Source: Vitrella brassicaformis CCMP3155 (lineage: Eukaryota; Protista; Chromerida). Taken from it: 64,000 nucleotides of DNA. The notes below the pieces were generated by a model, which was not told the origin of the DNA, did not search any database, and was given only the letters and a program-made list of their open reading frames with translations. Made by a program: the position numbers and the translations under genes. The number at the start of each line of letters is the position of its first letter. Position 1 is the stretch's first letter. The stretch spans positions 186,001-250,000 of the forward strand of contig CDMY01000562.1 in the NCBI GenBank assembly GCA_001179505.1. The letters run 5' to 3'. Positions 11,666-43,541 of the stretch are shown here, in pieces.

Positions 11666-13150
11666 ATGTTTGGAGGGACGGCGCCAGCAGAGGCACCGGC
11701 CGCCAAGGTAGCCGAATATGACTACAAGTTCAAGTGTGAGCAAAAAAGCACACAGAAAGACGCTGCACAATTGCAACGCCAAATGCCTTTCCTTGTCCTT
11801 GTCTGATCTGCGCCGTGTGGCTTCCCCTCATCGCCAGTGGTGCTCATCGGTAGGCGGGCGCCAAGAAGCCCAAGCATCCTTTGCTATCTTTGTGTGTTGC
11901 CACTATGTGTGTGTGCAGGTGAGAGGGATGTGGGGAAGACCTTTTTGCTGCGGCGCTATATCGCAGGTGGGTGTAGTGTGTTCTCTTTTTGCTGACGGCC
12001 GGCACCTTGCTGCCTGTGTGTGACTCATGGCTGCCTGCCTTCAGGCGATGCTGCCGAGCGTCCCACGACTACTCTTGGTACGGACTATCAGAGCAAGACC
12101 ATAGTCCTCAAAAACGGGGCCAGACTCAGGGCGCAGATATGGTGAGTCAGTTTTGTGTGAGAGGGAAAGAGGGCCTTCCCATGGATGGCGTCACGTCACG
12201 TCACGTCACGCGCCTGTCGTCCCTGTGTTGTGTGTGGTGTTTGGACCTGCAGGGATACGGCTGGTCAGGAGCGGTACAAGGCTCTCACCACGGGATTCTT
12301 TCGAAAAGCCGAAGGTGAGACCTCCCCCCGTCCTAAGGCAGACACTCCCTGTCTGTCTGTCTGTGTCTGTCTGTCTGTGTGTGTTGTCCAGGCGCCTTGC
12401 TGGTTTTTGACCTCACTCGACGGGATACCTTCCTTAAGGTAAGTACACATCCGCCCTTATGCGTCTGTCTGCCATGGTGTGTGTGTGCGTGTGTGTGTGT
12501 ATGTTGTGGTGTCTGTACAGTGTTCGGCGTGGCTGGAGGCGCTGGAGCGGTACGCGGATGCCGACTGCCAGATCTTCCTGGTCGGCAACAAGCTAGACCT
12601 CGTCCAGGCCGACCCCTCGCTCAGAGAAATATCCACCGACGAGGCGCAAAAGTCAGTCAGTCATTCAGCCAGCCAGTCAGCGAGCCCACACCAAACCGCA
12701 GGCACAACCAGTGGGCGCGTGTTCGTTCGTTCGTTTGACTGATTGGTTGTATGTATGTGTGTGTGCAGGTTTGCGGTCGATAAGGATGTGGAGTACGTCG
12801 AGACCTCCGCCGAGACCTCACACAACGTCAACAGCTCATTCGAAGACCTAATGGCATGTACGCGGACGCACCATACCACACCACACCACAGCCACAGCCA
12901 GCCTCCCGGCTCGACGAGTGTCCGTGTGCGGTGTGTGTGTTGCTCTCTCTGTTCTGCAGACGTGTACACGGCCCAGGTAGAGGCCAACGACGACTCGACT
13001 GGCGACACCAAGGCGTCTTACGACGGGCAGGGGTCGAAGGGCGGGTTCTTCTCCCTCTCCCGCACTCAGACCAAGGCGGGCTCCATCTCGCTCACCGGAG
13101 GGGCGGATGCCGGTGGACCCACACAGACATGCGGCGGGTGTGCGGGCTGA
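11666..13150 (+). CDS. Rab GTPase, divergent Rab11B-like, multi-exon
   Basis: Spliced: EYDYKFK-LVLIG-ERDVGKTFLLRRY..TTTLGTDY..AQIW-DTAGQERY..GALLVFDLT..LVGNKLDLVQADPSLR..VETSA..CGGCAG*. G1-G5 boxes are present. LVGNKxDLVxxDPSxR resembles alveolate Rab11B (from memory). Confidence 0.9.
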
Positions 13151-13354
13151 CTGAGTGGAGCAGAGCATATGGCATGGGTGGTGGGTTCGTGGGGGGTTGA
13201 TGTCTCATGTATCTCTATATCTCTATGTCTCTGTTGGTCAGTCCGTCTGTCAGTCATTCGGTGAGTGAGTGAGTGTTTTGCGTGGCCTTTTATAATTCAA
13301 AAGTGGTTCAAAAGTGATTGTATTGGTACGTCTACACCTGCGTGAGGGTGAGGG

Positions 13355-13601
13355 TGTGGGGGGGGCGAGGGAGTGCGTGGGCGACAGGTTTGTCTCGCTG
13401 TACATGAATCGAATCAATGACATTACGCTGATGCATATGGCTGTTAGTTATATATACGGGTGAGGTGGCTGATTGCCTTGCCGTGTGCAGAGCTGCTGAT
13501 GGTGAAGCCAAAACTGTATGATGTGATGTTGTGTGTGCATGAATTGTGTCTGCACGACAGAGAGAATGACCTACAGATGGATGCTCAATCACATGTGGAT
13601 G
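13355..13601 (+). repeat. Direct repeat unit A, left copy (carries an ~85-bp insertion)
   Basis: tgtggggggggcgagggagtg..ggtgaggtg(g/a)ctgattgcc..gaattgtgtctgcacgacagagagaatgacctacagatggatgctcaatcacatgtggatg recurs in the same orientation at 22783-22967. Confidence 0.9.
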
Positions 13602-13695
13602 TGTCTACGCCTGAGTGCCCCGGGGACGTCCCCCCTGCCCCGACCACACGAAGGAAAAATGTCCCAGTGGATGACGAACAAGAGAAGCAAACTTG

Positions 13696-14059
13696 TATGC
13701 CATCCCCATTGCGCTTTGGCACAGACAGCCAACACCTCTCCCAATGCCCAACGGCAGGCAGAGTCTGTCGGTGTCTCATGAAATGAACTGCGTCAATCGA
13801 CTCGACCAACCCTCAATCATGCGACAAACATGCCAGCCAGCACCATCTTCAGCGCCCGGCTGACGTATGTATCTTCCAGCGGCGCGGCCCACCACGAACA
13901 CACATCCTCGCACTATGCGCCAACGCAACAGACAGACAGACAGACGAGAGACGAGCAAGAATTGACCTAATCACCTGGCTATACGACTTGTCTGCCCACG
14001 GAGCCTTGGTGCGCAGCTTCTCTCTCTACCAGGCGGCTGAAAAAAAACTCTCCCAATCA
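13696..14059 (+). repeat. Repeat B, partial copy B1
   Basis: Near-identical to 14865-15205 (gacagccaacacctctcccaatgcccaacggcaggcagagtctgtcggtgtctcatgaaatgaactgcg..ctaccaggcggctgaaaaaa) and reverse-complementary to about 22415-22782. Confidence 0.92.
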
Positions 14060-14864
14060 CTGCCAGCATCACATATGAAGAAAAAAGACAACGCAGCAAA
14101 TCCCCTCCCTCCCTCCCTCCCTCCCATGTATGTGTGTATGTGTGTATGTGTGTATGTGTGTATGTATGTATATCAGCACTGCGGTACGCACACATGTCAG
14201 TGAAGGCAGCTTTCGGTGAATGAGTTGTCAGACAACTCAGTGCACTTTACTTCATCGCATTCATCCATCCATCCGTTCAGGCCGCATCGGTCCACCCGCC
14301 CCTGTGTGAAGGTTGTGTGTGCGCAGACACCCCATCAGATGCATCCCGCCACTTCCATGGAAGCCTCACTGTGTATGCGTGTGTCACCAGAGCGTAGGCA
14401 GACAGACAGCCAGACAGACAGACAGACGAAGTCGCTGGCCCGTGTCACAGACAAACAGACGCAGCAAATACGAACACATGACAGACAGACAGACAGACAG
14501 AGAGAGAGAGAGAGAGAGGGACGAGTAGACAGACGTGCGCGTACGATCGATTACCACACACACAAATGTATACATAGGTATATGTATATATATGTTTGTA
14601 CGTACAGAGCAGTACACACTTACGTACATGATCGCATATGTGAGCCACATGAATATTCATGGCCAATGTGTTTGTCAGTCAGTCAGTCGGGCAGATGGCC
14701 GGACGAGCAGAGATGGACTGGACACACAGCACCCCTCCCTCACCTCCCCCGCCTCTTGTGTGTGTGTGTATCCTCTGGGTGTGTACGGATGGATGTGTAT
14801 CAGCAATGCGGCACGCACACACACACAGAGACACTCAGACACTCAGACAGTCAGACAGAGGAAA

Positions 14865-16017
14865 GGCACGACAGCCAACACCTCTCCCAATGCCCAACGG
14901 CAGGCAGAGTCTGTCGGTGTCTCATGAAATGAACTGCGTCAATCGACTCGACCAGCCCTCAATCATGCGACAAACATGCCAGCCAGCACCATCTTCAGCG
15001 CCCGGCTGGCGTATGTATCTTCCAGCGGCGCCGCCCACCACGCACACACATCCTCGCACTACGCGCCAACGCAACAGACAGACAGACACACAGACAGACG
15101 AGCAAGAACCGACCTAATCACCTGGCTATACGACTTGTCTGCCCACGGAGCCTTGGTGCGCAGCTTCTCTCTCTACCAGGCGGCTGAAAAAACCCTCCCC
15201 CAATCAATGACTGCACTAGAGAGACCCTGTAATCCCGTGAAAAAGATCGGCCGATGGCACACAGCACATCGACATATACACCGCCTAGATCGAGCCATCC
15301 CAATTATCTCTGTGGGCCAGCCAACACGCCGCATGTGTCGGGCCATCCCTATGTGCGGGCGGCGGTCTCTCCGCGAAAAGCCCACGAACGAAAAAGGAAA
15401 AAGATGGACGTATGCATGTATGTATGTCGACGTACGTGATGCACACACACGACACGAACACGTGCAGATAGATAGACCACCGTCAACCTCCCCACTCACT
15501 GCGTCAACAGACAGACAGACAGACAGACAGCCAGCGGCGCTGCCTGACTCACTGACTGACTGACTTACAAAAGACCAGCCATCAATAATGGAAGCAGCAA
15601 AACCGACACATCCATCCCAGGCGATCAACAGGCGTACATGACATGCAGCCAGACATGACCCGTTCGTTCATTCGTCAGTCCATTTACTGCGTGGCCTCAC
15701 GACTGACTGCACGGGGGCCGCAGCAGCTTGAACCAACGAACGAACGAAGGCGGTGGCGGTGCACCGACAAAACGGCACGCACGTCCAAAAAGGGTACGTT
15801 GTGCATGGTATCAGGCACGCTCGACGGCCGGGCGTCACGCATGTGTGAATTCATTTGTATGTATGCCGGTGTACGCAGTATCCACATACGTAGGTATATA
15901 TGCCCCAAAGAGAGGGCAAAAAGCGCGCGGCGGCCATGACTCATGGCCGGCCGGCATCCCACACATGCAATGCAGTCAGCACCCAACCGACCAGCGAATG
16001 AATGGCCTCTCAAACAT
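14865..16017 (+). repeat. Repeat B, long copy B2: left arm of the ~1.15-kb inverted repeat
   Basis: Reverse complement of 21586-22745; for example 15181-15300 matches the reverse complement of 22321-22440 with scattered mismatches. Homology ends at ggcctctcaaacat (16017). Confidence 0.95.
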
Positions 16018-16271
16018 ATGGACAATTCGCAGACAGGCAGACATATAGACACAAACACACAAACACTCACACAGGCATGGCTTGCCTCAAAAAAACGTGA
16101 GTGCAGCCCACACGCAGACACAGGTGCGTGTGTGCACACACGTAGACACATGGACACACGGACACACATACACGCGACCATGCAGGGGGAGTGGCGCAAA
16201 GATGACAGTCCACACCGCTCCAATCCCACACACACGACCCGCCTATAGCTCACAACCAGCCACTAGTCACC

Positions 16272-18069
16272 TCAGACGGATGGCGACAGGGGGGTGTCGA
16301 CGTCCATGTCGTGCATGAACGGCACGCCCGTCCTCTCGCTGTGCGGCGTGCCGTTGTCGGCATGCGTCAGGATCGGTGTCACCTGGTGGGTAATCACGGC
16401 CTTCTTGACCAGGTGGTCCACGCCGCTCACCAGAGGTGCGTCGTGTGTGGGCTTGGGTGTGTGGGAGGGGGCGGGATTGACTACTTGGTTGTCGAGCCAC
16501 TGGTGGTCTGGCGTCTGGCCGTCGAAGGAGGCGATGTTGCCGATGGTCGTCTTGGCAATCGCCTCGAGGGCCTCGTAGGTGAAGAACGCCTTCACGCACA
16601 CGCAGAGAGAGAAAGAGGTAGATTGGACATGAGCATGGCTGTTGATTGGATGGTTAGGTACCTGGTGTGCGGTGACGAGTACGTTTGGGAATGTGAGTAG
16701 TCGCGCAATGACGTCGTCCTGGATGACCTCGTTGGACCAGTCCTCGAAGAACAGCTGAGCCTCGCCCTCGTACACATCAATCGCCAGACCACCAACCTGC
16801 ACACACACGGATACACGAGTGGACCATGACCATGTGACATACACATTCACTCTGTGAGCACCTTCTTCGACTTGAGTGCTTCGATCATGTCCTTGCTGTT
16901 GATCACCGGCCCTGAACACGCGCGCGCGCGGGCGCGATGCGCACACACACGGACATGCATGACGCAGGCAGCGTGTGGCGACTACCTGCGGATGGTGCGT
17001 ACCTCTAGACGTGTTGATAATGATGACGCCGGTCTTCATCTGTCCGATGGTCTTGTGGTCGATGAGGTGGCGGCTCTCGGCCGTGAGGGGGCAGTGCAGG
17101 GAGATGACGTCAGACGCCGCCAGTAGCTCGACCATCGGCGCATAACTCCCGCCGATTTTCTCGAATTCGGCGTCCGGGTACGGATCACTTCCTGCAGTTA
17201 GGCACAAGTGCATGCATCCATGCGTGCGATCAAGCAGCCCTTTCCGTGCCGTCAGGTGGCTGACCCAGTATGTTGGCACCGAACCCACTGCATATGCGAG
17301 CAGTGAGGCATCCGATCTTGCCCGTCCCGATGAATCCGAACGTCTTGCCTGACATGACACACGCGCACACGCATTCGTCCAGGGCACTGTGTGTCGCTGT
17401 GTGTGTGTATGTGTACCGTTGAAGTCCATGCCCTCCAAACCGTCCAGCGTGAAGTTGCGGTCACGCACACCTACAAACAGACACAGACATGCACACACAT
17501 ACCGACACTCAGATCGATCGTGCGTACGGTTGAAAGCCCGATGGAGGTTTCGATTGAGGCAGAGCATGAGGCCCACAGCGTGCTCCGCGACGGCGTGTGG
17601 CGAGTAGGCCGGCACACGGGTCACAGTGATGTTGCACCGCTCCGCGGCCGCCAGGTCCACTGAATGGACAGGACAAGAAAGAGCATTGCACAGAGACTGG
17701 GAGGGGTGCGCTGCGTTGTCTGTCCATTCTACCTCACCGTTGTTGAAGCCCGCGCACCTCAATGCGACCTGTCTGACGCCCATTTTGTTGAGCTCCTCGA
17801 CGACGGCCGCGTCCACCTCGTCGTTGATGAACACACAGACGGCGTGGCAACCCTTTGCAAGACCAGCTGTCGCCTACCCATGAAGAGAGCACACACCAGA
17901 CACACGTGTGTCTGCCTGGCTGTCTGTCTGTCTGATATATCCATCCCACTTGTGTGAGTCTTGCGTTGATGAATTCGAAGTCGATGTCATGGTGGTTGTG
18001 TGCGGTGAAAGATGCCTTGTCGTAGTCCTTGGCCGAGAAGAAAGCCACCTTGCACGGGCTGCTCGCCAT
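16272..18069 (-). CDS. ldhA: NAD-dependent D-lactate dehydrogenase, LdhA-like D-2-hydroxyacid dehydrogenase, 8 introns
   Basis: Spliced: KVAFFSAKDYDK..VCVFINDE..VALRCAGFNN-VDL..RVPAYSPHAVAEHAVG..GKTFGFIGTGKIG..DVISLHCPLT..IINTSR-G..IDVYEGE..FFED..NVLVTAHQ-AFFT. Colinear with E. coli LdhA motifs as I recall them. An in-frame N-terminal extension to about 18160 is possible. Confidence 0.95.
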
Positions 18070-18492
18070 GGTGCTGCTGCTGCTGCTGCCCTGCTGAGAG
18101 GGCAGGCAGTCGTAAGGCCGCACGAAGAAGTCACGCTCTATGTGCTGCAGGGAAGTCTCCATGATCTCTTGGTGATTCTGCACACACGCACACAGGAGGG
18201 AGGGAGAGAAAGTGATGGCATGCTTGACGTCGGCCAGTCAGCGCATCATGCACTGGGGCACACCCGAAGCTTGATGACGGATGAGGGAAGATCGACAAAC
18301 GATGCAAACAGCTGGATGAGGTCTGATTGACCCTGCGAGGGATGCGGGCGTCTCGGCGTCTCTCTTTCCCATTCCCAAGCGTCAATTTGGGAAACTTCGT
18401 ATTGGGACGTTGATGAGGGCAACCGACAGATCCCGAGCTTCATGTGATAGTTCACCAGCCGTCAGCAGCACTCACCCATGCCCTTCAAGATA
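18070..18492. promoter_or_regulatory. Putative bidirectional promoter and 5' UTRs of the ldhA-lctP pair
   Basis: 423 bp between divergent start codons 18069 (-) and 18493 (+), largely free of the microsatellites seen elsewhere. Confidence 0.6.
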
Positions 18493-19029
18493 ATGGAAGC
18501 AGAGAATGCCGTCGCTTTCCAATGGATGGCGAACTCGCCTGCAGCACAGGTCGGTGCATCATGATTGCTTGGCGGGACTCGAATGCATGAACGCGCGCTT
18601 GTCTTGCAGACGGTGTTCTATCTGGCGCCCATCGCGTTCTTGTTGGCGACGCTCAAGCCCTGGGGCAAGCATGGTGTGCCCAGCCAGAAGTCGCTGCCAA
18701 TCAGCGCCCTCCTGCGTAAGCACTGCAGTGAACTGCACTGGTGCACTGCACTGCACTGAACACTCTCGGCGACGTGCGTTGTGTGTTGTGCAATGGTTGG
18801 TTGGTTGCAGTGTATCTGATCCGGCTGGTGTTGATGCGTGGCATCGACTACGACACGCCCAACGTGCTTCACGCGGCGATAGTGTCGGGCCTGCTGGACG
18901 TCATGACGCCAGTCAGCATTATCTTCGGGGCCATCTTGCTCTTCCGAACAATGAGCGAAACCCAATGCATGTACGTGCGTACGTGACGTGGGTAGGGAAC
19001 GCGCAGGGAGGACATGCAACGCGATCTGT

Positions 19030-19067
<38 letters not shown>

Positions 19068-21299
19068 GTTGCAGGAGTTGGGTTGTGGCGATGCTCCATG
19101 ATCTGTCCAGTCAGCACCCTGTGGCCGAGGTAATGCCACAAAAAGTACCCCAGCAGCTGGCTGCATCTCATATGTGTTGTGTGTATGACCCATCTAGGTG
19201 ATGCTCATCGGCTGGGGCTTTGGGTACATCGTCGAAGGTGCGTCGGGATTCGGCACGCCTGTGGCTCTCGCGGCCCCAATATTGGCGGAGCTCGGCCACG
19301 ACCCCATCAAGTCGGTCGTCTGCTGCCTCATCATGAACGGAATCCCAAGTGAGATGTGTGCCATCCATCCACCATTCACTGCTTGCCTCATGTTTTCGCG
19401 TGTGCAGACCCGTTTGGTGCTGTTGGCACTCCCGTGTGGTTTGGATTCTCTGCTGTGGCTGGGCATGGCGACACGTACTTCCCAGTCATCGCACAAAAAA
19501 CCCAGACGCTCGTCCTGGTGTGCACCCTTGTGGTCCCCTTCACGGCCGTCATGGTGCTGGTACGCACGCCATATCACACTACAGCACACCACACCAGGAC
19601 AGTGGGTCATGTATGTCTATGTAGGTGCCTCCCAAGGTCTGTCTGAGAAACGCGGGTTTCATCGTGCTGTCATGTCTGGCGTGTGGCGTGCCCAGCTATG
19701 CGCTCACATGGGCGCCAAACCCACTCTTCGAGTTCGCGTCGCTCATCGGCGGGATTGTGGGTACGCACCGCACACACACGCGCGCACATCCATCCCTCTG
19801 TGCGTACGTACGTGCGTGTGCAGGTTTTGCGCTGATCATGGTGCTGATCTACAACAGAGTGTTGCTGTTCCCCGACCACCCCCCAAAGTCAGCCAGCTCT
19901 TGCCGGCCCCCAGGCGGCCTCCGTCAATGCGACTTGAGGCCAGCAATGGTCATTCGCCGCGCCAACAGTGTCGACAAGCTCTCTCAGGAGACGACGTCGA
20001 CAAACGATGACTGGGTCATTGAGGCGCCGCCCGCGGAGGTCACGCCTGGGCCGACCATGGACACGGCGTACGGACCTCTTCAAACGTATGGCATGGAGGT
20101 GGCCATCGTGATGACGAGGGACCAGCCCGTGCAATGTGACAGTATGGGGCCGCACCAACACGGGTGGGTGTTGTTTGGGCGGCCTGAGATCGCCCGCATG
20201 ATGAGCGACGCGGAGGGTGCGCTGCCGTGCGAGCCGTCACTGGTGTCGATTGGGCGTGTGGAGGCGCGCAAGACTATGTGGGGGCGGCTGTTTGTCGCCG
20301 CTGAGAACACCTTTCCTATCTGGGGCTGTGTCGTGCTACTCATTCTGACGCGCGTGAGGGGCATTGGGCTCAAGCAGGCACTTACCGCAGAAGAGCCGTA
20401 TGCAGAGGTACACATATGCGTGATGATCGATCTTCCAGTGCGTACGTGCGTGTGCGCGTGATGCAGGTGTCGTTGGGCCGTCTCGGAGCGTTTCGCGTCA
20501 GTGCGTCCCTGTCGCTCTTCCTGCGCGACATTCTCGCCCAGCCAGGCATTCACTGGCGGTTCCAGACGCTCTACGTGCCGGCGGTCATCCCCTTCGTGGT
20601 CATATCCCTCCTCACCATGGCACTGCACCGCAATCGGCTCCAAGCGTCGCCACTCGCCATTTTCGCCCAGACAGCCGCCAGACTCAGAGGCCCCATTATT
20701 GCGCTTGCCGGCGCCATGGCGCTCGTGAATCTGCTGCGGAGGTCATCTGAGGGGCTGGTGTCTCCCGCGACTAAGATCGGGGGTACGTTGTCTCGTGGTC
20801 TGGGCGTCGGGTGGGTCGTCGTGGCCCCTGTGCTTGGCGCGCTCGGGAGTTTTTTCTCTGGGTCGACGACGGTGTCCAACCTGACGTTTGGCGATATCCA
20901 GCGAGTAGCAGCAGAGCAACTGGTATGTGCATGTGTGCAGACAGGCATGCATGCAGCAATGGATTAATATGGTTGGTGTGTGTCGTGTGTCAGGGGTTCT
21001 CGGTATCATCCTTTCTGGCCCTCCAATGTATGGGCGGGGCGCTCGGCAACATGGTGAGCAGTGAATGGCCATCATTCATGGTCCACATGACAACAGAAAA
21101 ACGTCTGTCTGTCTGTCTGTGTGTCGGTCAGATTTGCATCCACAACATTCTGGCCGCGAAGACCGTCCTTGGTCTGGATGTGCCCGAGGGGGAATTCATC
21201 AAGAAGACGGCCGTGCCGGCAGCCGTCTACTACATGCTGGGCCTGGCACTCGGTGCGGCGCTCATCTTCACTACTGCCTGGTGGGGCGCCATCGACTGA
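18493..21299 (+). CDS. lctP: Lactate/glycolate permease, LctP family, 10 introns
   Basis: Spliced: MLIGWGFGYIVEGASGFGTPVALAAPIL..LIMNGIP-NPFGAVGTPVW..LGALGSFFSGSTTVSNLTFG..QCMGGALGNM-ICIHNILAA. These are LctP signature motifs with many TM segments. Confidence 0.93.
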
Positions 21300-21585
21300 C
21301 TTAGACAGACAGACAGATAGCCGTCCGTCTTTGGATGTGTTTCGTTGATAACATGGACAGCTGTGGTCGGTCGTGTGAGCGTGGGTGTAGGTAGGTTGCG
21401 CATGTACCTTTATGCGTGCGTGCGTGCGGTGCTTGTTCGTGTCGGTTGTTCGGGCCTCGTGTTCTGTCCACATGCCGATCTTTTTATCCACGTACAGTCA
21501 GTGTGTGGACTGCAAGCGGTCGTGTTATGTGGTCCTCTTTTCACGCGCGTGTATGCATATGCTGCGTACAGACGTCATGTTCTGG

Positions 21586-22782
21586 ATGTTTTGAGAGGCC
21601 ATTCATTCGCTGGTCGGTTGGGTGCTGACTGCATTGCATGTGTGGGATGCCGGCCGGCCGTCATGGCCGCCGCGCGCTTTTTGCCCTCTTTTTGTGCATA
21701 TATGCCTACGTATGTGAATACTGCGTACACCGGCATACATACAAATGAATTCACACATGCGTGACGCTCGGCCGTCGAGCGTGCCTGATACCATGCACAT
21801 CCCTTTTTGTATGTGCGTGCCGTTTTGTCGGTGCACCGCCACCGCCTTCCTTCGTTCGTTGGTTCAAGCTGCTGCGGCCCCCGTGCAGTCAGTCGTGAGG
21901 CCACGCAGTAAATGGACTGACGAATGAATGAACGGGTCATGTCTGGCTGCATGTCATGTACGCCTGTTGATCGCCTGGGATGGATGTGTCGGTTTTGCAT
22001 GGCCTGTTGATCGCCTGGGATGGATGTGTCGGTTTTGCTGCTTGGATTGATGGCTGGTCTTTTGTAAGTCAGTCAGTGAGTCAGGCAGCGCCGCTGTCTG
22101 TCTGTCTGTCTGTCTGTTGACGCCGTGAGTGGGGAGGTTGACGGTGGTCTATCTGCACGTGTTCGTGTCGTGTGTGTGCATCACGTACGTCGACATACAT
22201 ACATACGGACATCCATGTTTTTCCTTTTTCGTTCGTGGGCTTTTTGCGGAGAGACCGCCGCCCGCACATGGGGATGGCCCGACACATGCGGCGTGTTGGC
22301 TGGCCCACAGAGATAATTGGGATGGGTCGACCTAGGCGGTATATATGTCGATGTGCTGGGTGCCATCGGCCGATCTTTTTCACGCGTGCCATTACATCTT
22401 TAGTGCAGTCATTGATTGGGAGAGGGCTTTTTCAGCCGCTTGGTAGATCGAGAAGCTGCGCACCAAGGCTCCGTGGGCAGACAAGTCGTATAGCCAGGTG
22501 ATGGGGTCGTTTCGTGCTCGTCTGTCTGTCTGTCTGTTGCGTTGGCGCGTAGTGCGAGTGCGTGTGTGCGTGGTGGGCGGCGCCGCTGGAAGATACATAC
22601 GCCAGCCGGGCGCTGAAGATGGTGCTGGCTGGCATGTTTGTCGCATGATTGAGGTTGGTCGAGTCGATTGACGCACTTCATTTCATGAGACACCGACAGG
22701 CTTTGCCTGCCGTTGCGCATGGGAGAGGTGTTGGCTGTCTGTGCCCGAAAGGCTTCTGTGGAAGCCCAATGGGGATGGCATA
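21586..22782 (-). repeat. Repeat B, inverted copy: right arm
   Basis: Reverse complement of 14865-16017. Its outer end (aatggggatggcata, 22768-22782) matches the start of B1 at 13696. Confidence 0.95.
21962..22038 (+). repeat. 37-bp tandem duplication (40-bp period) present only in the right arm
   Basis: gcctgttgatcgcctgggatggatgtgtcggttttgc occurs twice. The left arm has one copy, at about 15597-15633 in reverse complement. Confidence 0.95.
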
Positions 22783-22967
22783 TGTGGGGGGGCGAGGGAG
22801 TGGGTGAGGTGACTGATTGCCCTGCCGTGTGCAGAGCTGCTAATGGTGAAACCAAAACTGTATGAATGATGTCTGTGTGTGTGTCTGTGTGTGTGTGTGT
22901 GTGTGTGAATTGTGTCTGCACGACAGAGAGAATGACCTACAGATGGATGCTCAATCACATGTGGATG
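22783..22967 (+). repeat. Direct repeat unit A, right copy, abutting the inverted arm
   Basis: Same-orientation match to 13355-13601, beginning at the base immediately after the B arm ends. Confidence 0.9.
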
Positions 22968-23943
22968 GAGCTCGATCGGTATGCTGCGTTGGTTTCAAGT
23001 TTCTGAAAGAGCATTTAGTGGCACGTCAAACACACACACACACACACGGGGGGAGACACACACGCCCGTATGTAAGTCAGTCAGTAGTAGCACGTCGAGT
23101 CAGTCAGTCGTCACAAAGAGGAGGAGGTGGAGGAAGGAGGAGGAAGGACATCGATCCATCCATCCATCTGTCCACCCACCAGTCGTCAGCCTAAGGCACA
23201 CGCACATCCATTCATTCACGAAACACAGTGAGAGTGAGTGAGTGGATGCAGCCCCCCCGTCTCTCTCCCTCTCTCTGGGCCTTTAACACCCACACCACAC
23301 CACACCAAGCCACAACACATCTCAGTCAGTCAGTCATCAGAGTCAAGAGCGTCCATCTGCCTGTGTGACGCCCTTCGCTCACCCCACCCACCCATCCACC
23401 CACAACAACTTAGACCGTCAACGGAGGGCGGGGGGAGGGAGGGAGGGAGGGAGGGAGGAATGACAAATGGCGTGTGCAGCAGGGCAAGGAGAGAGAGAAG
23501 CCAAGGAAAGAAGAATGTGGCGGCTAGGTGGTGTGGGTGTGGGGGTGTGGGCACTTGCTCTACCTAGCACCATCAAAAGCTGGATTGGATGGATGGAGGG
23601 ATGGATATGGATCCACCCATTCACCATCTATCTCAAGACGGACGGACGGAAAAAGACGACAGCTGGATGAGCCGCCCAGCCGCCCGCCGGCCGGCGGCCG
23701 TGCTGCAACAGAGGAAGGTGGTCATTCGCTCCTTCGCTCACTCACTCACTGCGATCGATCAATGCACTTGCAGAGAGAGAGGAAGGACCCACACAGCTGG
23801 TGACAGAGAGCGGGGGCGGGGTGGTTAAAAAAGCAATAATCAGAAAAGGCCTCAATCCACTGTGCTGTGGGAGGGCGGGGAGAGCAAAGCACACGTGTGT
23901 GTGCGCGCGTGTGCGTGTGTGGGTGTGTGGGTGGGTGAGGGGG

Positions 23944-24243
23944 NNNNNNNNNNNNNNNNNNNNNNNNNNNNNNNNNNNNNNNNNNNNNNNNNNNNNNNNN
24001 NNNNNNNNNNNNNNNNNNNNNNNNNNNNNNNNNNNNNNNNNNNNNNNNNNNNNNNNNNNNNNNNNNNNNNNNNNNNNNNNNNNNNNNNNNNNNNNNNNNN
24101 NNNNNNNNNNNNNNNNNNNNNNNNNNNNNNNNNNNNNNNNNNNNNNNNNNNNNNNNNNNNNNNNNNNNNNNNNNNNNNNNNNNNNNNNNNNNNNNNNNNN
24201 NNNNNNNNNNNNNNNNNNNNNNNNNNNNNNNNNNNNNNNNNNN
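23944..24243. other. Assembly gap (300 N)
   Basis: Run of N following a G-rich tract. Confidence 1.
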
Positions 24244-37900: not shown

Positions 37901-39024
37901 GTCTGTGTATCTGATCATGGAACCAGGCGCTAGTGCCGATGGGTCTGATGCCGTTGCCGGTGCAAGTCGACAAGGAGAAGATGGTCGTCGAGTTCCAAAA
38001 CCAAAAGGAGGCAAAACTCGAGGCGCAATACAGAGGTACGTTACGTAAGGACATACGCACATCCGAACCGCATCGCATCGATGCATTGATTGATTGATTG
38101 GCTGGCTGATACATATCCGCTGCATTGCATGCAGAGTTCGTGGCATCGCTGCCCGAGGAGAAGGAAACCAAGCTCACCCGCAGCATGAGCATCTCTGACC
38201 CTCAAGACGCCAAAGGGGTCAGCCAGCCAGTCAGCCAACTTCGCCTGTTTCAGTCATAGTTTGATTGACATTTGTGTGTGTGGGGGGGGGGNNNNNNNNN
38301 NNNNNNNNNNNNNNNNNNNNNNNNNNNNNNNNNNNNNNNNNNNNNNNNNNNNNNNNNNNNNNNNNNNNNNNNNNNNNNNNNNNNNNNNNNNNNNNNNNNN
38401 NNNNNNNNNNNNNNNNNNNNNNNNNNNNNNNNNNNNNNNNNNNNNNNNNNNNNNNNNNNNNNNNNNNNNNNNNNNNNNNNNNNNNNNNNNNNNNNNNNNN
38501 NNNNNNNNNNNNNNNNNNNNNNNNNNNNNNNNNNNNNNNNNNNNNNNNNNNNNNNNNNNNNNNNNNNNNNNNNNNNNNNNNNNNNNNNNNNGCGTGTATG
38601 TCACTCACACCTATATAGGACCGTGCAATGGTCAAGGACATGACAGCCCAGGCGCGCATCAAGCTGTCCGTCGGTGACCGCAGCAAAATGTTCGGAAGCC
38701 TCAACAAAACAGAAGCGTACGTGTCGACAACAAGACGACCATGTGCACACACACGATGGACTGCTGATCTTGTGTGTCACGTATAGGTTGAAGTTCCACA
38801 GCCAGCAGCTTCCCCAGCCGCCCAAGGAGTTGGGTTACATCCACCTGGCCGACAAGCAGAAGGGCCACAAGATCCCCGGACTTGCCGACATCCAGTGGGG
38901 AGAGGCCACCCCCGCACAGCAGCAGCAGCAGCAGGAGGAGGGCCAGCAGCCCCAAGCGGCGCCACAGGGCCTCGAGGGCGCCCAGCAGCTTCAGGCGAGG
39001 CTGCTGCCGCCACCGCAGAAATGA
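34957..39024 (+). CDS. NIPA-family (DMT superfamily) Mg2+ transporter-like membrane protein, multi-exon, spans a gap
   Basis: WWWGMIIYISGNAVHMLALAFAPASVLSPMNSVSL..GELLG and HYCNQGMMQGESTVVLPCYY..TLGGFAKFHE match the NIPA pattern (WW.G..G..AF.FAP..V.PL; LN.AL..F....V.P.YY). Start may be 35086. Confidence 0.85.
38292..38591. other. Assembly gap (300 N) inside an intron of the NIPA gene
   Basis: N run after a poly-G tract. Confidence 1.
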
Positions 39025-40145: not shown

Positions 40146-42371
40146 TGGCGTACGCTGGCGATGACAGGGCTGCCGAATCGCTCTTCGAGCCTCGCCCAAG
40201 TGAGATCTCGCTCACCATGAGCTCTACTCGCTCTCGCACGCACATATCGGTCCCTGGTGCCACTTTCCTGCTGTGGCGATGGACGGATGGATGGATGTGC
40301 AGGTCCAGACACCAATCGTACCGCTGCTGCTGGTGCTGCTGCCGGGGCGCCAGGATCTGCCATCGACGCACCGCCAGCACCACTGTCGCTCCGCTCGCGC
40401 AGGACACGGAAGCCACAGGAGGTGAGATGGATTGGATGGATGGATGGCTGACCGTGTGTGGTGTGTGGTGTATGTGCAGGATGAGCGTGTACAGCGCACG
40501 GTTGACGAGCAGGCCCAGGCGATGCTGCCCGAAGGCCATCCTGCCATCGAAAGAGGTGCGTATGCGTTGATATCTCATTTCTGGTGTTCATCATCCTCTC
40601 TCTTGGTACTTGTCTGCCTGTCTGCCTGCCTCTTCATTCAATTGGATCCAGCTGAGCCTCAGAGGAAGGAGGGCGCCGCTGCCCGCATTCGCACTCTGGG
40701 AGGTGAGGAGAGAGGGGGGGGNNNNNNNNNNNNNNNNNNNNNNNNNNNNNNNNNNNNNNNNNNNNNNNNNNNNNNNNNNNNNNNNNNNNNNNNNNNNNNN
40801 NNNNNNNNNNNNNNNNNNNNNNNNNNNNNNNNNNNNNNNNNNNNNNNNNNNNNNNNNNNNNNNNNNNNNNNNNNNNNNNNNNNNNNNNNNNNNNNNNNNN
40901 NNNNNNNNNNNNNNNNNNNNNNNNNNNNNNNNNNNNNNNNNNNNNNNNNNNNNNNNNNNNNNNNNNNNNNNNNNNNNNNNNNNNNNNNNNNNNNNNNNNN
41001 NNNNNNNNNNNNNNNNNNNNNCCCGCATTCGCACTCTGGGAGGTGAGGAGAGAGGGGGGGGGGAGGGAGGGAGGGGGGGAGGGAGGGAGGTCGTGCGTTT
41101 TCATGTGCGTGGTCTGCGGTGCGTGTGTGTGTGTGTGGTGTGTGCAGGTGGTCTAGGAGGGTCGACGTGTTTTGAAGTCGCCGTAGCTGGGGAGATAGAG
41201 AACATACAGGTGAGTCCGCCGCAGCACATCGCGCCATCTGCCTTACCTTCCCGTCGTCCATCCATCCATCCATCCGTGTCATATGTGTATTGGAGCGAAG
41301 GGCTGTTTTGATGGGTGTTGGGTGTTGGGTGTGGTGTGATGGCAGTTGCCTGAGGGGAGCCGGTCTGCCCCTCTGGTGTGTCGATACCAACTCGTATACG
41401 GACCTGACTGGGCACTCGTCCAGGTAAGTCAGTAAGCCAACTGCACAACGATACGCACGAATGAATGAACACGCTGGCTGCCTCTCCGTGTGTGTGTGTG
41501 TGTGTGTGTGGAGGGTCCTGACTCAGGGGTCTCGCAGAGTGCGTGTGGTCCGTTGGGCGGGGGTGCGGGCGGCGCCTCTGTGGGGGCGCTCTCCGCCCTC
41601 AACCCCTTCTACGTCCCCACGCCGCCGTCGGTCGTTATCAACTTCCCATTCAACGCCGTCTTCAAAGTAAGAAAGGACGGCTAGGCTATGTGTGTGTAAG
41701 TTTGTGTGTCTGTCGATGGATGGATGGATGGATGGATGGCTGCAGGCGCAGAATGCGTTCGGGTGGCCGAGGGTGCTCGTGTGCATCTACGCTACAGACT
41801 GGTGGGTGAACTATCTGAGCGGATGGATGGATGAGAGGGGCTGGTCCCTCACTATCCACGCCCTCCCTCTACCCCTCCCTCCCTCCCTCCCTCTATCCAT
41901 CCATCCATCAGGTGCAACCGTCGCGTTATCAGGGGCTACTCGTCCGTCCACGTCCCCACTCAGCCAGGGAGGTACTGGACGACGCACTGCACTGCACCAC
42001 AACACACCACACCACACAATGATTGCAATTGACGGATGCACACTCTCCTCAGGCACGTGCGTTGGCTGCGTCTGTACTGCCCGGTGGCGTCCTCGTGGCT
42101 GTCGCGCTTCATGGGCTGGCTCACGGGCAACCGGGCGGAGTACATCGACCCAAAGACGGCAGCTCACAGCGAGGGCAGGGAAGGTACGCACATGTGTACG
42201 CCACCCCATTGTGTGCTGCGCCATGCCATGCCATGCCATGCCATGCCATTTGTGTGGGTGTGTGGGTGTTTGTGTGTCGTTTCAGTGGTGCGGGTGAGGA
42301 GCGGTGGTCGCGTCAAGGTGGTGCTCAACGTGCTGCTCAAAGACACCAAGCCGTTCAACTACTCGTTCTGA
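40146..42371 (+). CDS. B9D1: B9 domain protein 1 (ciliary transition zone) with N-terminal extension
   Basis: Spliced: FEVAVAGEIENIQ-LPE..CRYQLVYGPDWALVQ..VINFPFNAVFK-AQNAFGWPRVLVCIY..RGYSSVHVPTQPG-RH..FMGWLTGNRAEYIDPK..EGRE-VVRVRSGG..NVLLKD. Colinear with B9D1 as I recall it. 5' exons are less certain. Confidence 0.9.
40722..41021. other. Assembly gap (300 N), probably a false gap
   Basis: Sequence 40682-40721 is repeated immediately after the gap (41022-41061). Confidence 0.95.
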
Positions 42372-43241: not shown

Positions 43242-43541
43242 NNNNNNNNNNNNNNNNNNNNNNNNNNNNNNNNNNNNNNNNNNNNNNNNNNNNNNNNNNN
43301 NNNNNNNNNNNNNNNNNNNNNNNNNNNNNNNNNNNNNNNNNNNNNNNNNNNNNNNNNNNNNNNNNNNNNNNNNNNNNNNNNNNNNNNNNNNNNNNNNNNN
43401 NNNNNNNNNNNNNNNNNNNNNNNNNNNNNNNNNNNNNNNNNNNNNNNNNNNNNNNNNNNNNNNNNNNNNNNNNNNNNNNNNNNNNNNNNNNNNNNNNNNN
43501 NNNNNNNNNNNNNNNNNNNNNNNNNNNNNNNNNNNNNNNNN
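43242..43541. other. Assembly gap (300 N)
   Basis: N run in intergenic DNA. Confidence 1.

What the first reader, a model, noticed from the sequence alone, without database searches (positions are those of the whole stretch)
16272..21299. Functionally coupled eukaryotic gene pair: bacterial-like D-LDH head-to-head with an LctP permease
Seen: LdhA-like dehydrogenase (-) and LctP-family permease (+), with start codons 423 bp apart. Both are fully intronised (8 and 10 introns), so they are long-resident nuclear genes. Established: LdhA reduces pyruvate to D-lactate in fermentation. LctP/GlcA transport L-/D-lactate and glycolate, are mainly prokaryotic, and often sit beside lactate dehydrogenase genes in bacteria. 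Inference: a two-gene metabolic cluster for fermentative D-lactate production and export (dark or anoxic redox relief), or for lactate/glycolate uptake, either co-transferred from a bacterium or assembled secondarily.
Basis: partly seen in the sequence, partly recalled or inferred. Interest (0 to 1): 0.75.

Follow-up and report, generated by a model that had tools for sequence, protein, structure and literature searches.

The report
Lactate enzyme and transporter gene pair
In the alga Vitrella brassicaformis, a bacterial-type D-lactate dehydrogenase gene sits back-to-back with a lactate-permease gene, and both are transcribed and spliced; this copies a common bacterial ldhA-lctP operon, but the two genes have different histories, so the alga probably assembled the pair itself, and what it does is untested.

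Summary
The window is Vitrella brassicaformis CCMP3155. A D-lactate dehydrogenase (minus strand, 9 coding exons) lies head-to-head with an LctP permease (plus strand, 11 exons).

Two runs hold one spliced 4,247-nt contig covering both genes. It adds a minus-strand 5' intron (18178-18263) and shows no untranscribed gap between the genes.

The enzyme is LdhA-type: 365-382 bits to E. coli and P. aeruginosa fermentative D-LDHs, with the catalytic and pyruvate-restricting residues kept.

The permease belongs to a eukaryote-wide LctP clade, first noted in Oxyrrhis, diatoms and Sphaeroforma (PMC3942190; here also other dinoflagellates, a red alga and a fungus). The clade shares a long central loop that bacteria lack.

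New support for coupling: 12 of the 79 nearest bacterial lctP loci have ldhA directly upstream on the same strand, and one has it divergent.

Against co-transfer:
- The D-LDH's nearest listed relatives, apart from Vitrella's own paralogues, all carry bacterial names or no name.
- Both families expanded inside Vitrella (4 LctP, 3 D-LDH), and only this locus links them.
- Six other eukaryotic genomes show no linkage.

Secondary assembly is favoured. Substrate, direction and location are untested. Other first-reader notes of this scan cover the same stretch (the inverted repeats and the shared 3' flanks).

The parts
16272..18443 (-). D-lactate dehydrogenase gene (LdhA type). The public model (P0001, 501 aa) adds a 5' exon, 18443-18264.
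   Evidence: Peptide mapping. Pfam 2-Hacid_dh and 2-Hacid_dh_C. PDB: 382 bits to 5z20, 365 bits to E. coli LdhA 3wx0/5z1z. Spliced contig in runs X6 and X7.
18178..18263 (-).
   Evidence: The contig pieces 17949-18177 and 18264-18546 are joined in runs X6 and X7. The ends were read. The public model P0001 uses this intron.
18070..18492 (.). Shared 5' region between the two ATGs (423 bp). It holds the D-LDH 5' exon and intron. RNA-derived sequence is continuous across 18264-18546, so the divergent transcripts abut or overlap.
   Evidence: The start sites were not mapped.
18493..21299 (+). LctP-family permease gene, 11 exons: 18493-18549, 18610-18714, 18810-18971, 19076-19135, 19198-19347, 19407-19562, 19625-19762, 19823-20405, 20465-20921, 20994-21053, 21131-21299. 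Boundaries are good to 1-3 nt where they come from peptide mapping. The public model P0290 (683 aa) starts at the second ATG, 18526.
   Evidence: Pfam Lactate_perm 254.8 bits. TIGR00795 238.7 bits, below its cut-off of 341.
19823..20405 (+). Large exon that encodes most of a hydrophilic central loop: 163 residues between the conserved anchors G262 and P426. The loop is typical of the eukaryotic LctP clade and has no family match.
   Evidence: Loop length is 123-281 residues in named eukaryotes against a median of 40 in 79 bacteria. No Pfam hit.
14865..16017 (.). Left arm of an inverted repeat. The D-LDH 3' end runs into it, 258 nt after the stop.
   Evidence: about 90% identity with gaps, ungapped blocks 92-100%. 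The RNA contig ends about 30 nt inside the arm.
21586..22745 (.). Right arm of the inverted repeat. The LctP 3' end runs into it, 290 nt after the stop. Both mRNAs therefore carry the same sequence at their 3' ends.
   Evidence: A contig of run X1 (RNA by guess only) runs from 21500 across 21600 for 59 more letters, to about 21659.
13458..13601 (.). Direct repeat A. Its partner lies at 22802-22967, and the two flank the whole inverted-repeat unit. A partial extra copy of the outer arm lies at 13690-14068.

Best explanation
A divergently transcribed two-gene lactate module in the nuclear genome of Vitrella brassicaformis.

The minus-strand gene encodes an NADH-dependent, LdhA-type D-lactate dehydrogenase, which reduces pyruvate to D-lactate. 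The plus-strand gene encodes a eukaryote-type LctP permease, a family whose studied members are proton-coupled carriers of lactate and glycolate. The 5' ends abut or overlap, so the two share one short control region. Both 3' ends run into the two arms of an inverted repeat and so carry the same 3' sequence.

The most likely role is to make D-lactate from pyruvate when NADH must be re-oxidised (dark or low oxygen) and to move the lactate across a membrane, most simply out of the cell.

The arrangement copies a recurrent bacterial ldhA-lctP operon. It was most likely put together within the Vitrella lineage from genes of separate origin.

Shown: gene identities, splicing, transcription of both genes, adjacency, the bacterial operon precedent, and the different phylogenetic neighbourhoods. 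Inferred: co-regulation, substrate, direction of transport, location, and the order of events.
For: - Identity.
- Active site (aligned to E. coli LdhA 5z1z): the aligned blocks around Phe51, Tyr101, Arg235, Glu264, His296 and Phe299, and the NADH-type Asp of the DPYP motif, carry the same residues; positions other than Phe51 are numbered from my memory of LdhA. The roles of Phe51, the conserved Tyr and Phe/Tyr loops and the NADH-type Asp are from PMC6303947; the catalytic Arg-Glu-His triad is my own knowledge.
- Expression: one spliced contig spans both genes in two runs from two studies.
- Coupling precedent: ldhA lies directly upstream of lctP in 12 of 79 bacterial loci and is divergent in 1. 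About 0.3 would be expected by chance. The linked LdhAs are scattered over the tree, so the pairing arose or spread repeatedly.
- Secondary assembly: the LctP is in a eukaryote clade with a shared loop insert. The D-LDH has only bacterial or unnamed near relatives, at 54-64% identity. There are 4 LctP and 3 D-LDH paralogues, each a Vitrella-only clade, and they are linked only here.
- Age: introns are shared among paralogues.
- Context: chromerid lactate dehydrogenases have been proposed to ferment pyruvate in dark anaerobic periods (PMC6668581).
Against: - There is no expression data across conditions. One contig gives no relative levels, and contigs do not show strand or start sites.
- The LctP scores below the NCBIfam subfamily cut-off and matches neither LldP nor GlcA as an equivalog. 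Its substrate is open.
- No targeting prediction was possible. The public D-LDH model has 97 extra N-terminal and about 75 extra C-terminal residues of unknown meaning.
- The D-LDH tree has no resolved sister group. One weak grouping (53% support) with three lctP-linked bacterial LdhAs keeps an operon origin possible.
- One Vitrella LctP paralogue (P0121) is cut by a contig start, so its upstream neighbour is unknown.
- Vitrella's genome is compact, and head-to-head neighbours are common there.
Confidence: 0.5

Rival explanations
1. The pair is coupled, but not for fermentative export. One version is a 'lactate valve' or shuttle: D-lactate made by this enzyme is passed by an LctP across an organelle membrane and oxidised by the mitochondrial cytochrome-dependent D-lactate dehydrogenases. 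Other versions are uptake of external lactate, or glycolate traffic linked to photorespiration.
For: - Chlamydomonas LdhA-type D-LDH is proposed as a lactate valve feeding mitochondrial cytochrome-dependent D-LDH and glycolate dehydrogenase. It also reduces glyoxylate weakly (PMC4722173).
- Vitrella has two K00102 D-lactate dehydrogenase (cytochrome) genes (supplement of PMC6668581).
- From my own knowledge, the LctP members LldP and GlcA carry L-lactate, D-lactate and glycolate.
- The window LctP matches the GlcA and LldP models equally weakly, at 79 bits each.
Against: - The window LctP begins almost directly with its first hydrophobic segment, with no presequence-like extension (14-type reading of P0290). 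This fits a secretory or plasma-membrane route better than a mitochondrial one, but no predictor was run.
- Phe51, which restricts LdhA to pyruvate-sized substrates, is kept (PMC6303947).
Confidence: 0.2
2. The pair is a relic of a bacterial ldhA-lctP operon that entered a eukaryote as one piece. The genes later gained introns, one of them was inverted, and duplicates dispersed.
For: - ldhA-lctP operons are frequent among the nearest bacterial LctP relatives. One Flavobacteriales locus even has the divergent order, with a 405-bp spacer.
- Those LdhAs are 50-54% identical to the Vitrella enzyme.
- In one tree the Vitrella D-LDHs sit with three lctP-linked LdhAs, at only 53% support.
Against: - The LctP groups with other eukaryotes (100 support) and shares their loop insert.
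- None of six eukaryote genomes with this LctP has a D-LDH beside it.
- No eukaryote other than Vitrella appears among the 118 best D-LDH relatives.
- The nearest named bacterial D-LDH (Puniceicoccales) has no lctP neighbour.
Confidence: 0.12
3. Chance neighbours in a compact genome: two independently regulated genes that happen to lie head-to-head.
For: - Gene density is high: about one gene per 3-4 kb in the fetched Vitrella loci.
- The other LctP paralogues are also head-to-head with unrelated genes 58-309 bp away.
- No co-regulation data exist.
Against: - The expected chance of an LctP and D-LDH adjacency is about 0.001. The gene number behind this estimate is from memory.
- Bacteria repeat the same pairing independently.
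- The two genes have overlapping or abutting 5' transcripts and identical 3' flanks.
Confidence: 0.15

Closest known systems
Bacterial ldhA-lctP two-gene operons (seen here in Bacteroidota, Flavobacteriales, Fibrobacterales, Salinispira, Hahella and Phycisphaerales genomes; loci L020, L021, L023, L048, L050, L053, L054, L058, L065, L067, L079, L086)
   Same: The same two families lie side by side: an LdhA-type D-LDH (50-54% identical to the Vitrella enzyme) and an LctP permease (about 40-46% identical in the best segment).
   Different: In bacteria the genes are co-directional, 24-160 bp apart, intron-less and presumably on one mRNA. In Vitrella they are divergent, have 9 and 10 introns and give separate mRNAs. 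The Vitrella LctP carries the eukaryote-type loop insert.
E. coli LdhA and P. aeruginosa fermentative D-LDH (PDB 3wx0, 5z1z, 5z20)
   Same: The alignment runs full length over the core at 365-382 bits. The catalytic Arg, Glu and His, Phe51, Tyr101, Phe299 and the NADH-type Asp are all kept.
   Different: The Vitrella protein has a tail of about 75 residues, and possibly a 97-residue N-terminal extension, with no family match. Its activity was not measured.
Eukaryotic LctP clade, first noted in Oxyrrhis marina, diatoms and Sphaeroforma (Lee et al. 2014, PMC3942190)
   Same: The Vitrella LctPs fall in a eukaryote clade split from bacteria with 100 support and share the long central loop. Here the clade holds dinoflagellates, a diatom, a red alga and a fungus; Oxyrrhis and Sphaeroforma were not in my trees, so that it is the clade of that paper is inferred from the shared diatoms and the alveolate kinship.
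   Different: Vitrella has four paralogues, and one of them is paired with a D-LDH. No such pairing was seen in Thalassiosira, Prorocentrum, Symbiodinium, Pyropia, Hyaloraphidium or assembly GCA_025491035.
Chlamydomonas chloroplast D-LDH, Cr-LDH1 (PDB 4zgs; PMC4722173)
   Same: It is an LdhA-family, NAD-dependent pyruvate reductase of an alga, and it is linked to dark fermentation and a proposed lactate valve.
   Different: It is a more distant relative than the bacterial enzymes: 261 bits against 365-382. No adjacent transporter gene is reported in that paper.
Small metabolic gene clusters and divergent pairs in eukaryotes (for example nitrate-assimilation clusters of algae and the GAL and DAL clusters of yeast; from my own knowledge)
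   Same: An enzyme and a transporter of one pathway lie side by side and probably share control sequences.
   Different: Here there are only two genes, co-regulation is not shown, and the pair lies between 1.15-kb inverted repeats.

Membership tests
[quoted passage not shown] | Two-domain architecture: 2-Hacid_dh catalytic domain and 2-Hacid_dh_C NAD-binding domain. | tested here: met
   P0001 scores 103.3 and 165.2 bits against cut-offs of about 25. Single exons also match.
[quoted passage not shown] | Catalytic Arg235, Glu264 and His296 (E. coli LdhA numbering). | tested here: met
   The NTSRG, DVYE and HQAF blocks carry the same residues as the aligned blocks of 5z1z and 3wx0.
[quoted passage not shown] | Residues that restrict the pocket to pyruvate (Phe51, Tyr101, Phe/Tyr299) and the Asp that favours NADH. 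| tested here: met
   The alignment shows Phe in VCVFIND, Tyr in VPAYSP, Phe in HQAF and Asp in SDPYP. The residue roles are from PMC6303947.
[quoted passage not shown] | Closest characterised relatives are D-lactate dehydrogenases, not glyoxylate reductases, PGDH or FDH. | tested here: met
   The top 16 PDB matches are all deposited as D-lactate dehydrogenases or LdhA-type 2-hydroxyacid dehydrogenases (163-382 bits). Glyoxylate reductases score 117 bits or less.
[quoted passage not shown] | Measured pyruvate reductase activity that yields D-lactate. | not testable with these tools
   This needs an assay of the recombinant enzyme.
LctP (lactate permease) family, TC 2.A.14 / Pfam PF02652 | Full-length match to the family profile above the curated threshold. 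| tested here: met
   Pfam Lactate_perm scores 254.8 bits against a cut-off of 27, in two stretches split by the loop insert.
LctP (lactate permease) family, TC 2.A.14 / Pfam PF02652 | NCBIfam TIGR00795 subfamily cut-off, and equivalog status as LldP or GlcA. | tested here: not met
   TIGR00795 scores 238.7 bits against a cut-off of 341. GlcA scores 79 against 1121, and LldP 78.8 against 918. It is a family member, but not assignable to either characterised transporter.
LctP (lactate permease) family, TC 2.A.14 / Pfam PF02652 | Conserved family motifs shared with bacterial members. | tested here: met
   65 columns are invariant over 17 sequences, including the blocks E128 G129 S131-P136 and G580 ... 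S593 T596 F597.
LctP (lactate permease) family, TC 2.A.14 / Pfam PF02652 | Transport of lactate or glycolate. | not testable with these tools
   There is no solved structure related by sequence. A transport assay is needed.
Horizontally co-transferred bacterial operon | Both genes trace to the same donor lineage, to the exclusion of other eukaryotes. | tested here: not met
   The LctP lies in a eukaryote clade. The D-LDH lies among bacteria with no resolved sister.
Co-regulated eukaryotic metabolic gene pair | Correlated expression of the two genes across conditions. | not tested
   The only evidence is that both spliced mRNAs are present in the same two runs.

The most novel reading that the evidence does not exclude
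The two genes, their shared 5' region and their identical 3' flanks form one 7.9-9.3-kb cassette. It is bounded by 1.15-kb inverted repeats and, outside those, by 145-165-bp direct repeats. Such a unit could have been inserted, moved or flipped as a block. That would be a eukaryotic re-invention of the bacterial ldhA-lctP operon as a movable or invertible module, or else a direct descendant of such an operon.
Probability: 0.12. Interest if true: 0.65.

Novelty: new member of a known kind. Interest (0 to 1): 0.4.

Why it matters
If the pair is truly co-regulated, a eukaryote has convergently rebuilt an operon-like unit that many bacteria use: the enzyme that makes lactate next to the carrier that moves it.

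It would also name a candidate lactate carrier in a free-living relative of apicomplexan parasites. From my own knowledge, those parasites export lactate through an unrelated FNT-type channel. Chromerid mitochondria are thought to take electrons from D-lactate (PMC6668581 and the work it cites).

The eukaryotic LctP clade, with its long extra loop, has no studied member. This locus gives a concrete hypothesis for its substrate.

In practice the pair is already annotated in the public genome, and the kind of arrangement is known. The value is a testable functional lead rather than a new principle.

Tried and rejected
- The big profile search with LctP exon 9 did not return the window's own protein. 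It did lead to the paralogues P0121 and P0122.
- The 722-aa gene head-to-head with a D-LDH on contig CDMY01000234 was tested as a hidden LctP and is not one: tblastn gives no hit.
- Intron positions shared between Vitrella and Symbiodinium, diatom, fungal or red-algal LctP genes were sought as a sign of vertical descent. No convincing sharing was found.
- Three D-LDH trees with different samples did not resolve a donor.
- The nearest named bacterial D-LDH (Puniceicoccales) has no lctP neighbour.
- Rfam finds nothing in 13000-23900.
- The inverted-repeat arm was not found elsewhere in the window, in six other Vitrella loci, or in the scan's notes.
- Flegontov et al. 2015 is not held in the library.
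- No solved structure is related to the LctP by sequence.
- The many 'joints' between about 17934 and 21103 are artefacts of a shared (GTCT)n microsatellite, not splicing.

Full report
**What is there**

The region is GC-rich, intron-rich eukaryotic DNA. The D-LDH lies on the minus strand, with ATG at 18069, stop at 16272 and 9 coding exons. The LctP lies on the plus strand, with ATG at 18493, its stop codon ending at 21299, and 11 exons. There are 423 bases between the ATGs.

Exon-by-exon scans give 2-Hacid_dh, 2-Hacid_dh_C and Lactate_perm/TIGR00795. A stop-free 520-codon frame through most D-LDH exons, given by reference, retrieved the public protein of this very locus. That protein is P0001, named Vitrella brassicaformis CCMP3155. 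A paralogue-based word search retrieved the public LctP of the locus, P0290. Both lie on the same 333,361-bp contig.

**Transcription**

Runs X6 and X7, from two studies, each hold one 4,247-nt contig that covers both genes with all introns removed. Joints are CT..AC in the D-LDH and GT..AG in the LctP, and piece lengths fit the coding sequences. The contig adds a minus-strand intron at 18178-18263. It is continuous from 18264 to 18546, through the LctP start codon.

The '423-bp spacer' is therefore largely transcribed, and the two transcripts abut or overlap. A contig across two genes is not one transcript, and contigs show neither strand nor level. Co-induction is therefore not shown.

The public models start at upstream and downstream in-frame ATGs (18443 and 18526), 82 bp apart.

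**The enzyme**

The core of P0001 scores 382 bits to the fermentative D-LDH of P. aeruginosa (5z20) and 365 bits to E. coli LdhA (3wx0, 5z1z). It scores 261 bits to the Chlamydomonas enzyme (4zgs) and 117 bits or less to glyoxylate reductases.

The alignment keeps Phe51, Tyr101, Arg235, Glu264, His296, Phe299 and the NADH-type Asp. The roles of the pocket residues and the Asp are given in PMC6303947; the Arg-Glu-His triad and the numbering beyond Phe51 are from my own knowledge. This argues for a pyruvate reductase rather than a broad 2-keto-acid or glyoxylate reductase. The 97-residue N-terminal extension of the public model and the 75-residue tail match no family.

**The permease**

P0290 is a clear Pfam member at 254.8 bits. 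It falls below the NCBIfam subfamily cut-off and is far from the LldP and GlcA equivalogs. No solved structure is related by sequence.

Trees split a eukaryote clade from all bacterial sequences with 100 SH-aLRT. The clade holds four Vitrella paralogues, Prorocentrum, Symbiodinium, Thalassiosira, Pyropia, Hyaloraphidium and MMETSP transcripts. Its named eukaryotic members share a central loop of 123-281 residues, where 79 bacteria have a median of 40. A eukaryotic LctP clade of bacterial origin was already described from Oxyrrhis, diatoms and Sphaeroforma (PMC3942190).

**Histories**

The four Vitrella LctPs form one clade and the three Vitrella D-LDHs form another, each with 100 support. The other two D-LDHs sit in a row with an Ldh_1-type dehydrogenase on contig CDMY01000234.

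None of the other LctP loci has a D-LDH. One of them is cut by its contig start. Seven of 8 D-LDH introns and 9 of 10 LctP introns are shared with paralogues, so both genes were intron-bearing nuclear genes before those duplications.

A clean search with P0002 lists only bacterial or unnamed proteins after the Vitrella copies, at 54-64% identity, with no other eukaryote source. The sister group is unresolved. LctP genes of six other eukaryote genomes have no D-LDH neighbour.

**Bacterial precedent**

Among the 79 bacterial loci nearest to this LctP, the counts are as follows:
- 12 have an LdhA-type gene directly upstream on the same strand, 24-160 bp away.
- 1 (Flavobacteriales, L085) has it divergent, 405 bp away.
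- 2 have it within 6 kb.

About 0.3 such loci would be expected by chance. The linked LdhAs are 50-54% identical to the Vitrella enzyme and are scattered over the D-LDH tree. The pairing is therefore recurrent. This is the best independent evidence that the two functions belong together.

**Reading**

The pair is most likely a functional lactate module that makes D-lactate and moves it, assembled in the Vitrella lineage. A shuttle or uptake role, or glycolate traffic, is a live alternative (PMC4722173). A relic operon and pure chance are less likely.

**Flanks**

The unit lies between inverted repeats, 14865-16017 and 21586-22745, extending to about 22785. There is an extra partial arm at 13690-14068, and direct repeats lie outside at 13458-13601 and 22802-22967. 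Both 3' ends enter the arms, so the two mRNAs share their 3' sequence. Other first-reader notes of this scan cover these points.

**Limits and omissions**

I used exons by reference and the public proteins. The spliced protein of the third D-LDH paralogue has no reference. Only a straight translation of L001:5488-6159, holding intron-derived residues and two stops that count as gaps, was used, in one local tree.

Noticed in passing
window 13458-22967: The gene pair is the unique centre of a larger structure. It runs: direct repeat A (13458-13601), a partial outer-arm copy (13690-14068), 796 bp of low-complexity DNA, the left arm (14865-16017), the two genes, the right arm (21586 to about 22785, inverted), and direct repeat A' (22802-22967). 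The arms are about 90% alike with gaps, and the inner 70 bp are identical. Neither the arms nor A were found elsewhere in the window or in six other Vitrella loci.
   Followed up: partly
L001 (Vitrella contig CDMY01000234.1) 4948-11845: Three dehydrogenase genes lie in a row on one strand: an LdhA-type D-LDH (374 aa), an Ldh_1_N/Ldh_1_C protein (L-LDH/MDH type, 348 aa), and an LdhA-type D-LDH (369 aa, P0002). This is a second lactate-related cluster in the same genome.
   Followed up: partly
L020, L021, L023, L048, L050, L053, L054, L058, L065, L067, L079, L086 (co-directional); L085 (divergent): ldhA-lctP two-gene operons recur across unrelated bacterial phyla. I did not look for a description of this operon in the literature.
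   Followed up: partly
P0290 residues 263-425 (window 19823-20405) and homologues: Eukaryotic LctP proteins share a hydrophilic central loop of 120-280 residues at one site, where bacteria have about 40. It has no family match and its function is unknown. Two clade members of unknown origin (P0294, P0307) lack it.
   Followed up: partly
L005 3141-4625 and L006 4955-5863: An Arf-family GTPase gene lies a few kb upstream of the LctP gene at two of the paralogous Vitrella loci. This may be a trace of a segmental duplication, or a coincidence.
   Followed up: no
window 17917-17935 and 21103-21120: (GTCT)n microsatellites lie in an intron of each gene. They are very common in this genome and gave many false long-range 'joints' and depth spikes when contigs were laid.
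   Followed up: yes
Prorocentrum cordatum assembly GCA_963575745.1 (no DNA fetched): Two identical-length LctP genes (648 aa) lie in tandem, 4.8 kb apart, as is usual for dinoflagellate gene arrays.
   Followed up: no
window 23944-24243, 38292-38591, 40722-41021, 43242-43541: There are four 300-N assembly gaps. The first lies 1 kb beyond the right-hand direct repeat, so the far right context of the cassette is not fully assembled.
   Followed up: no
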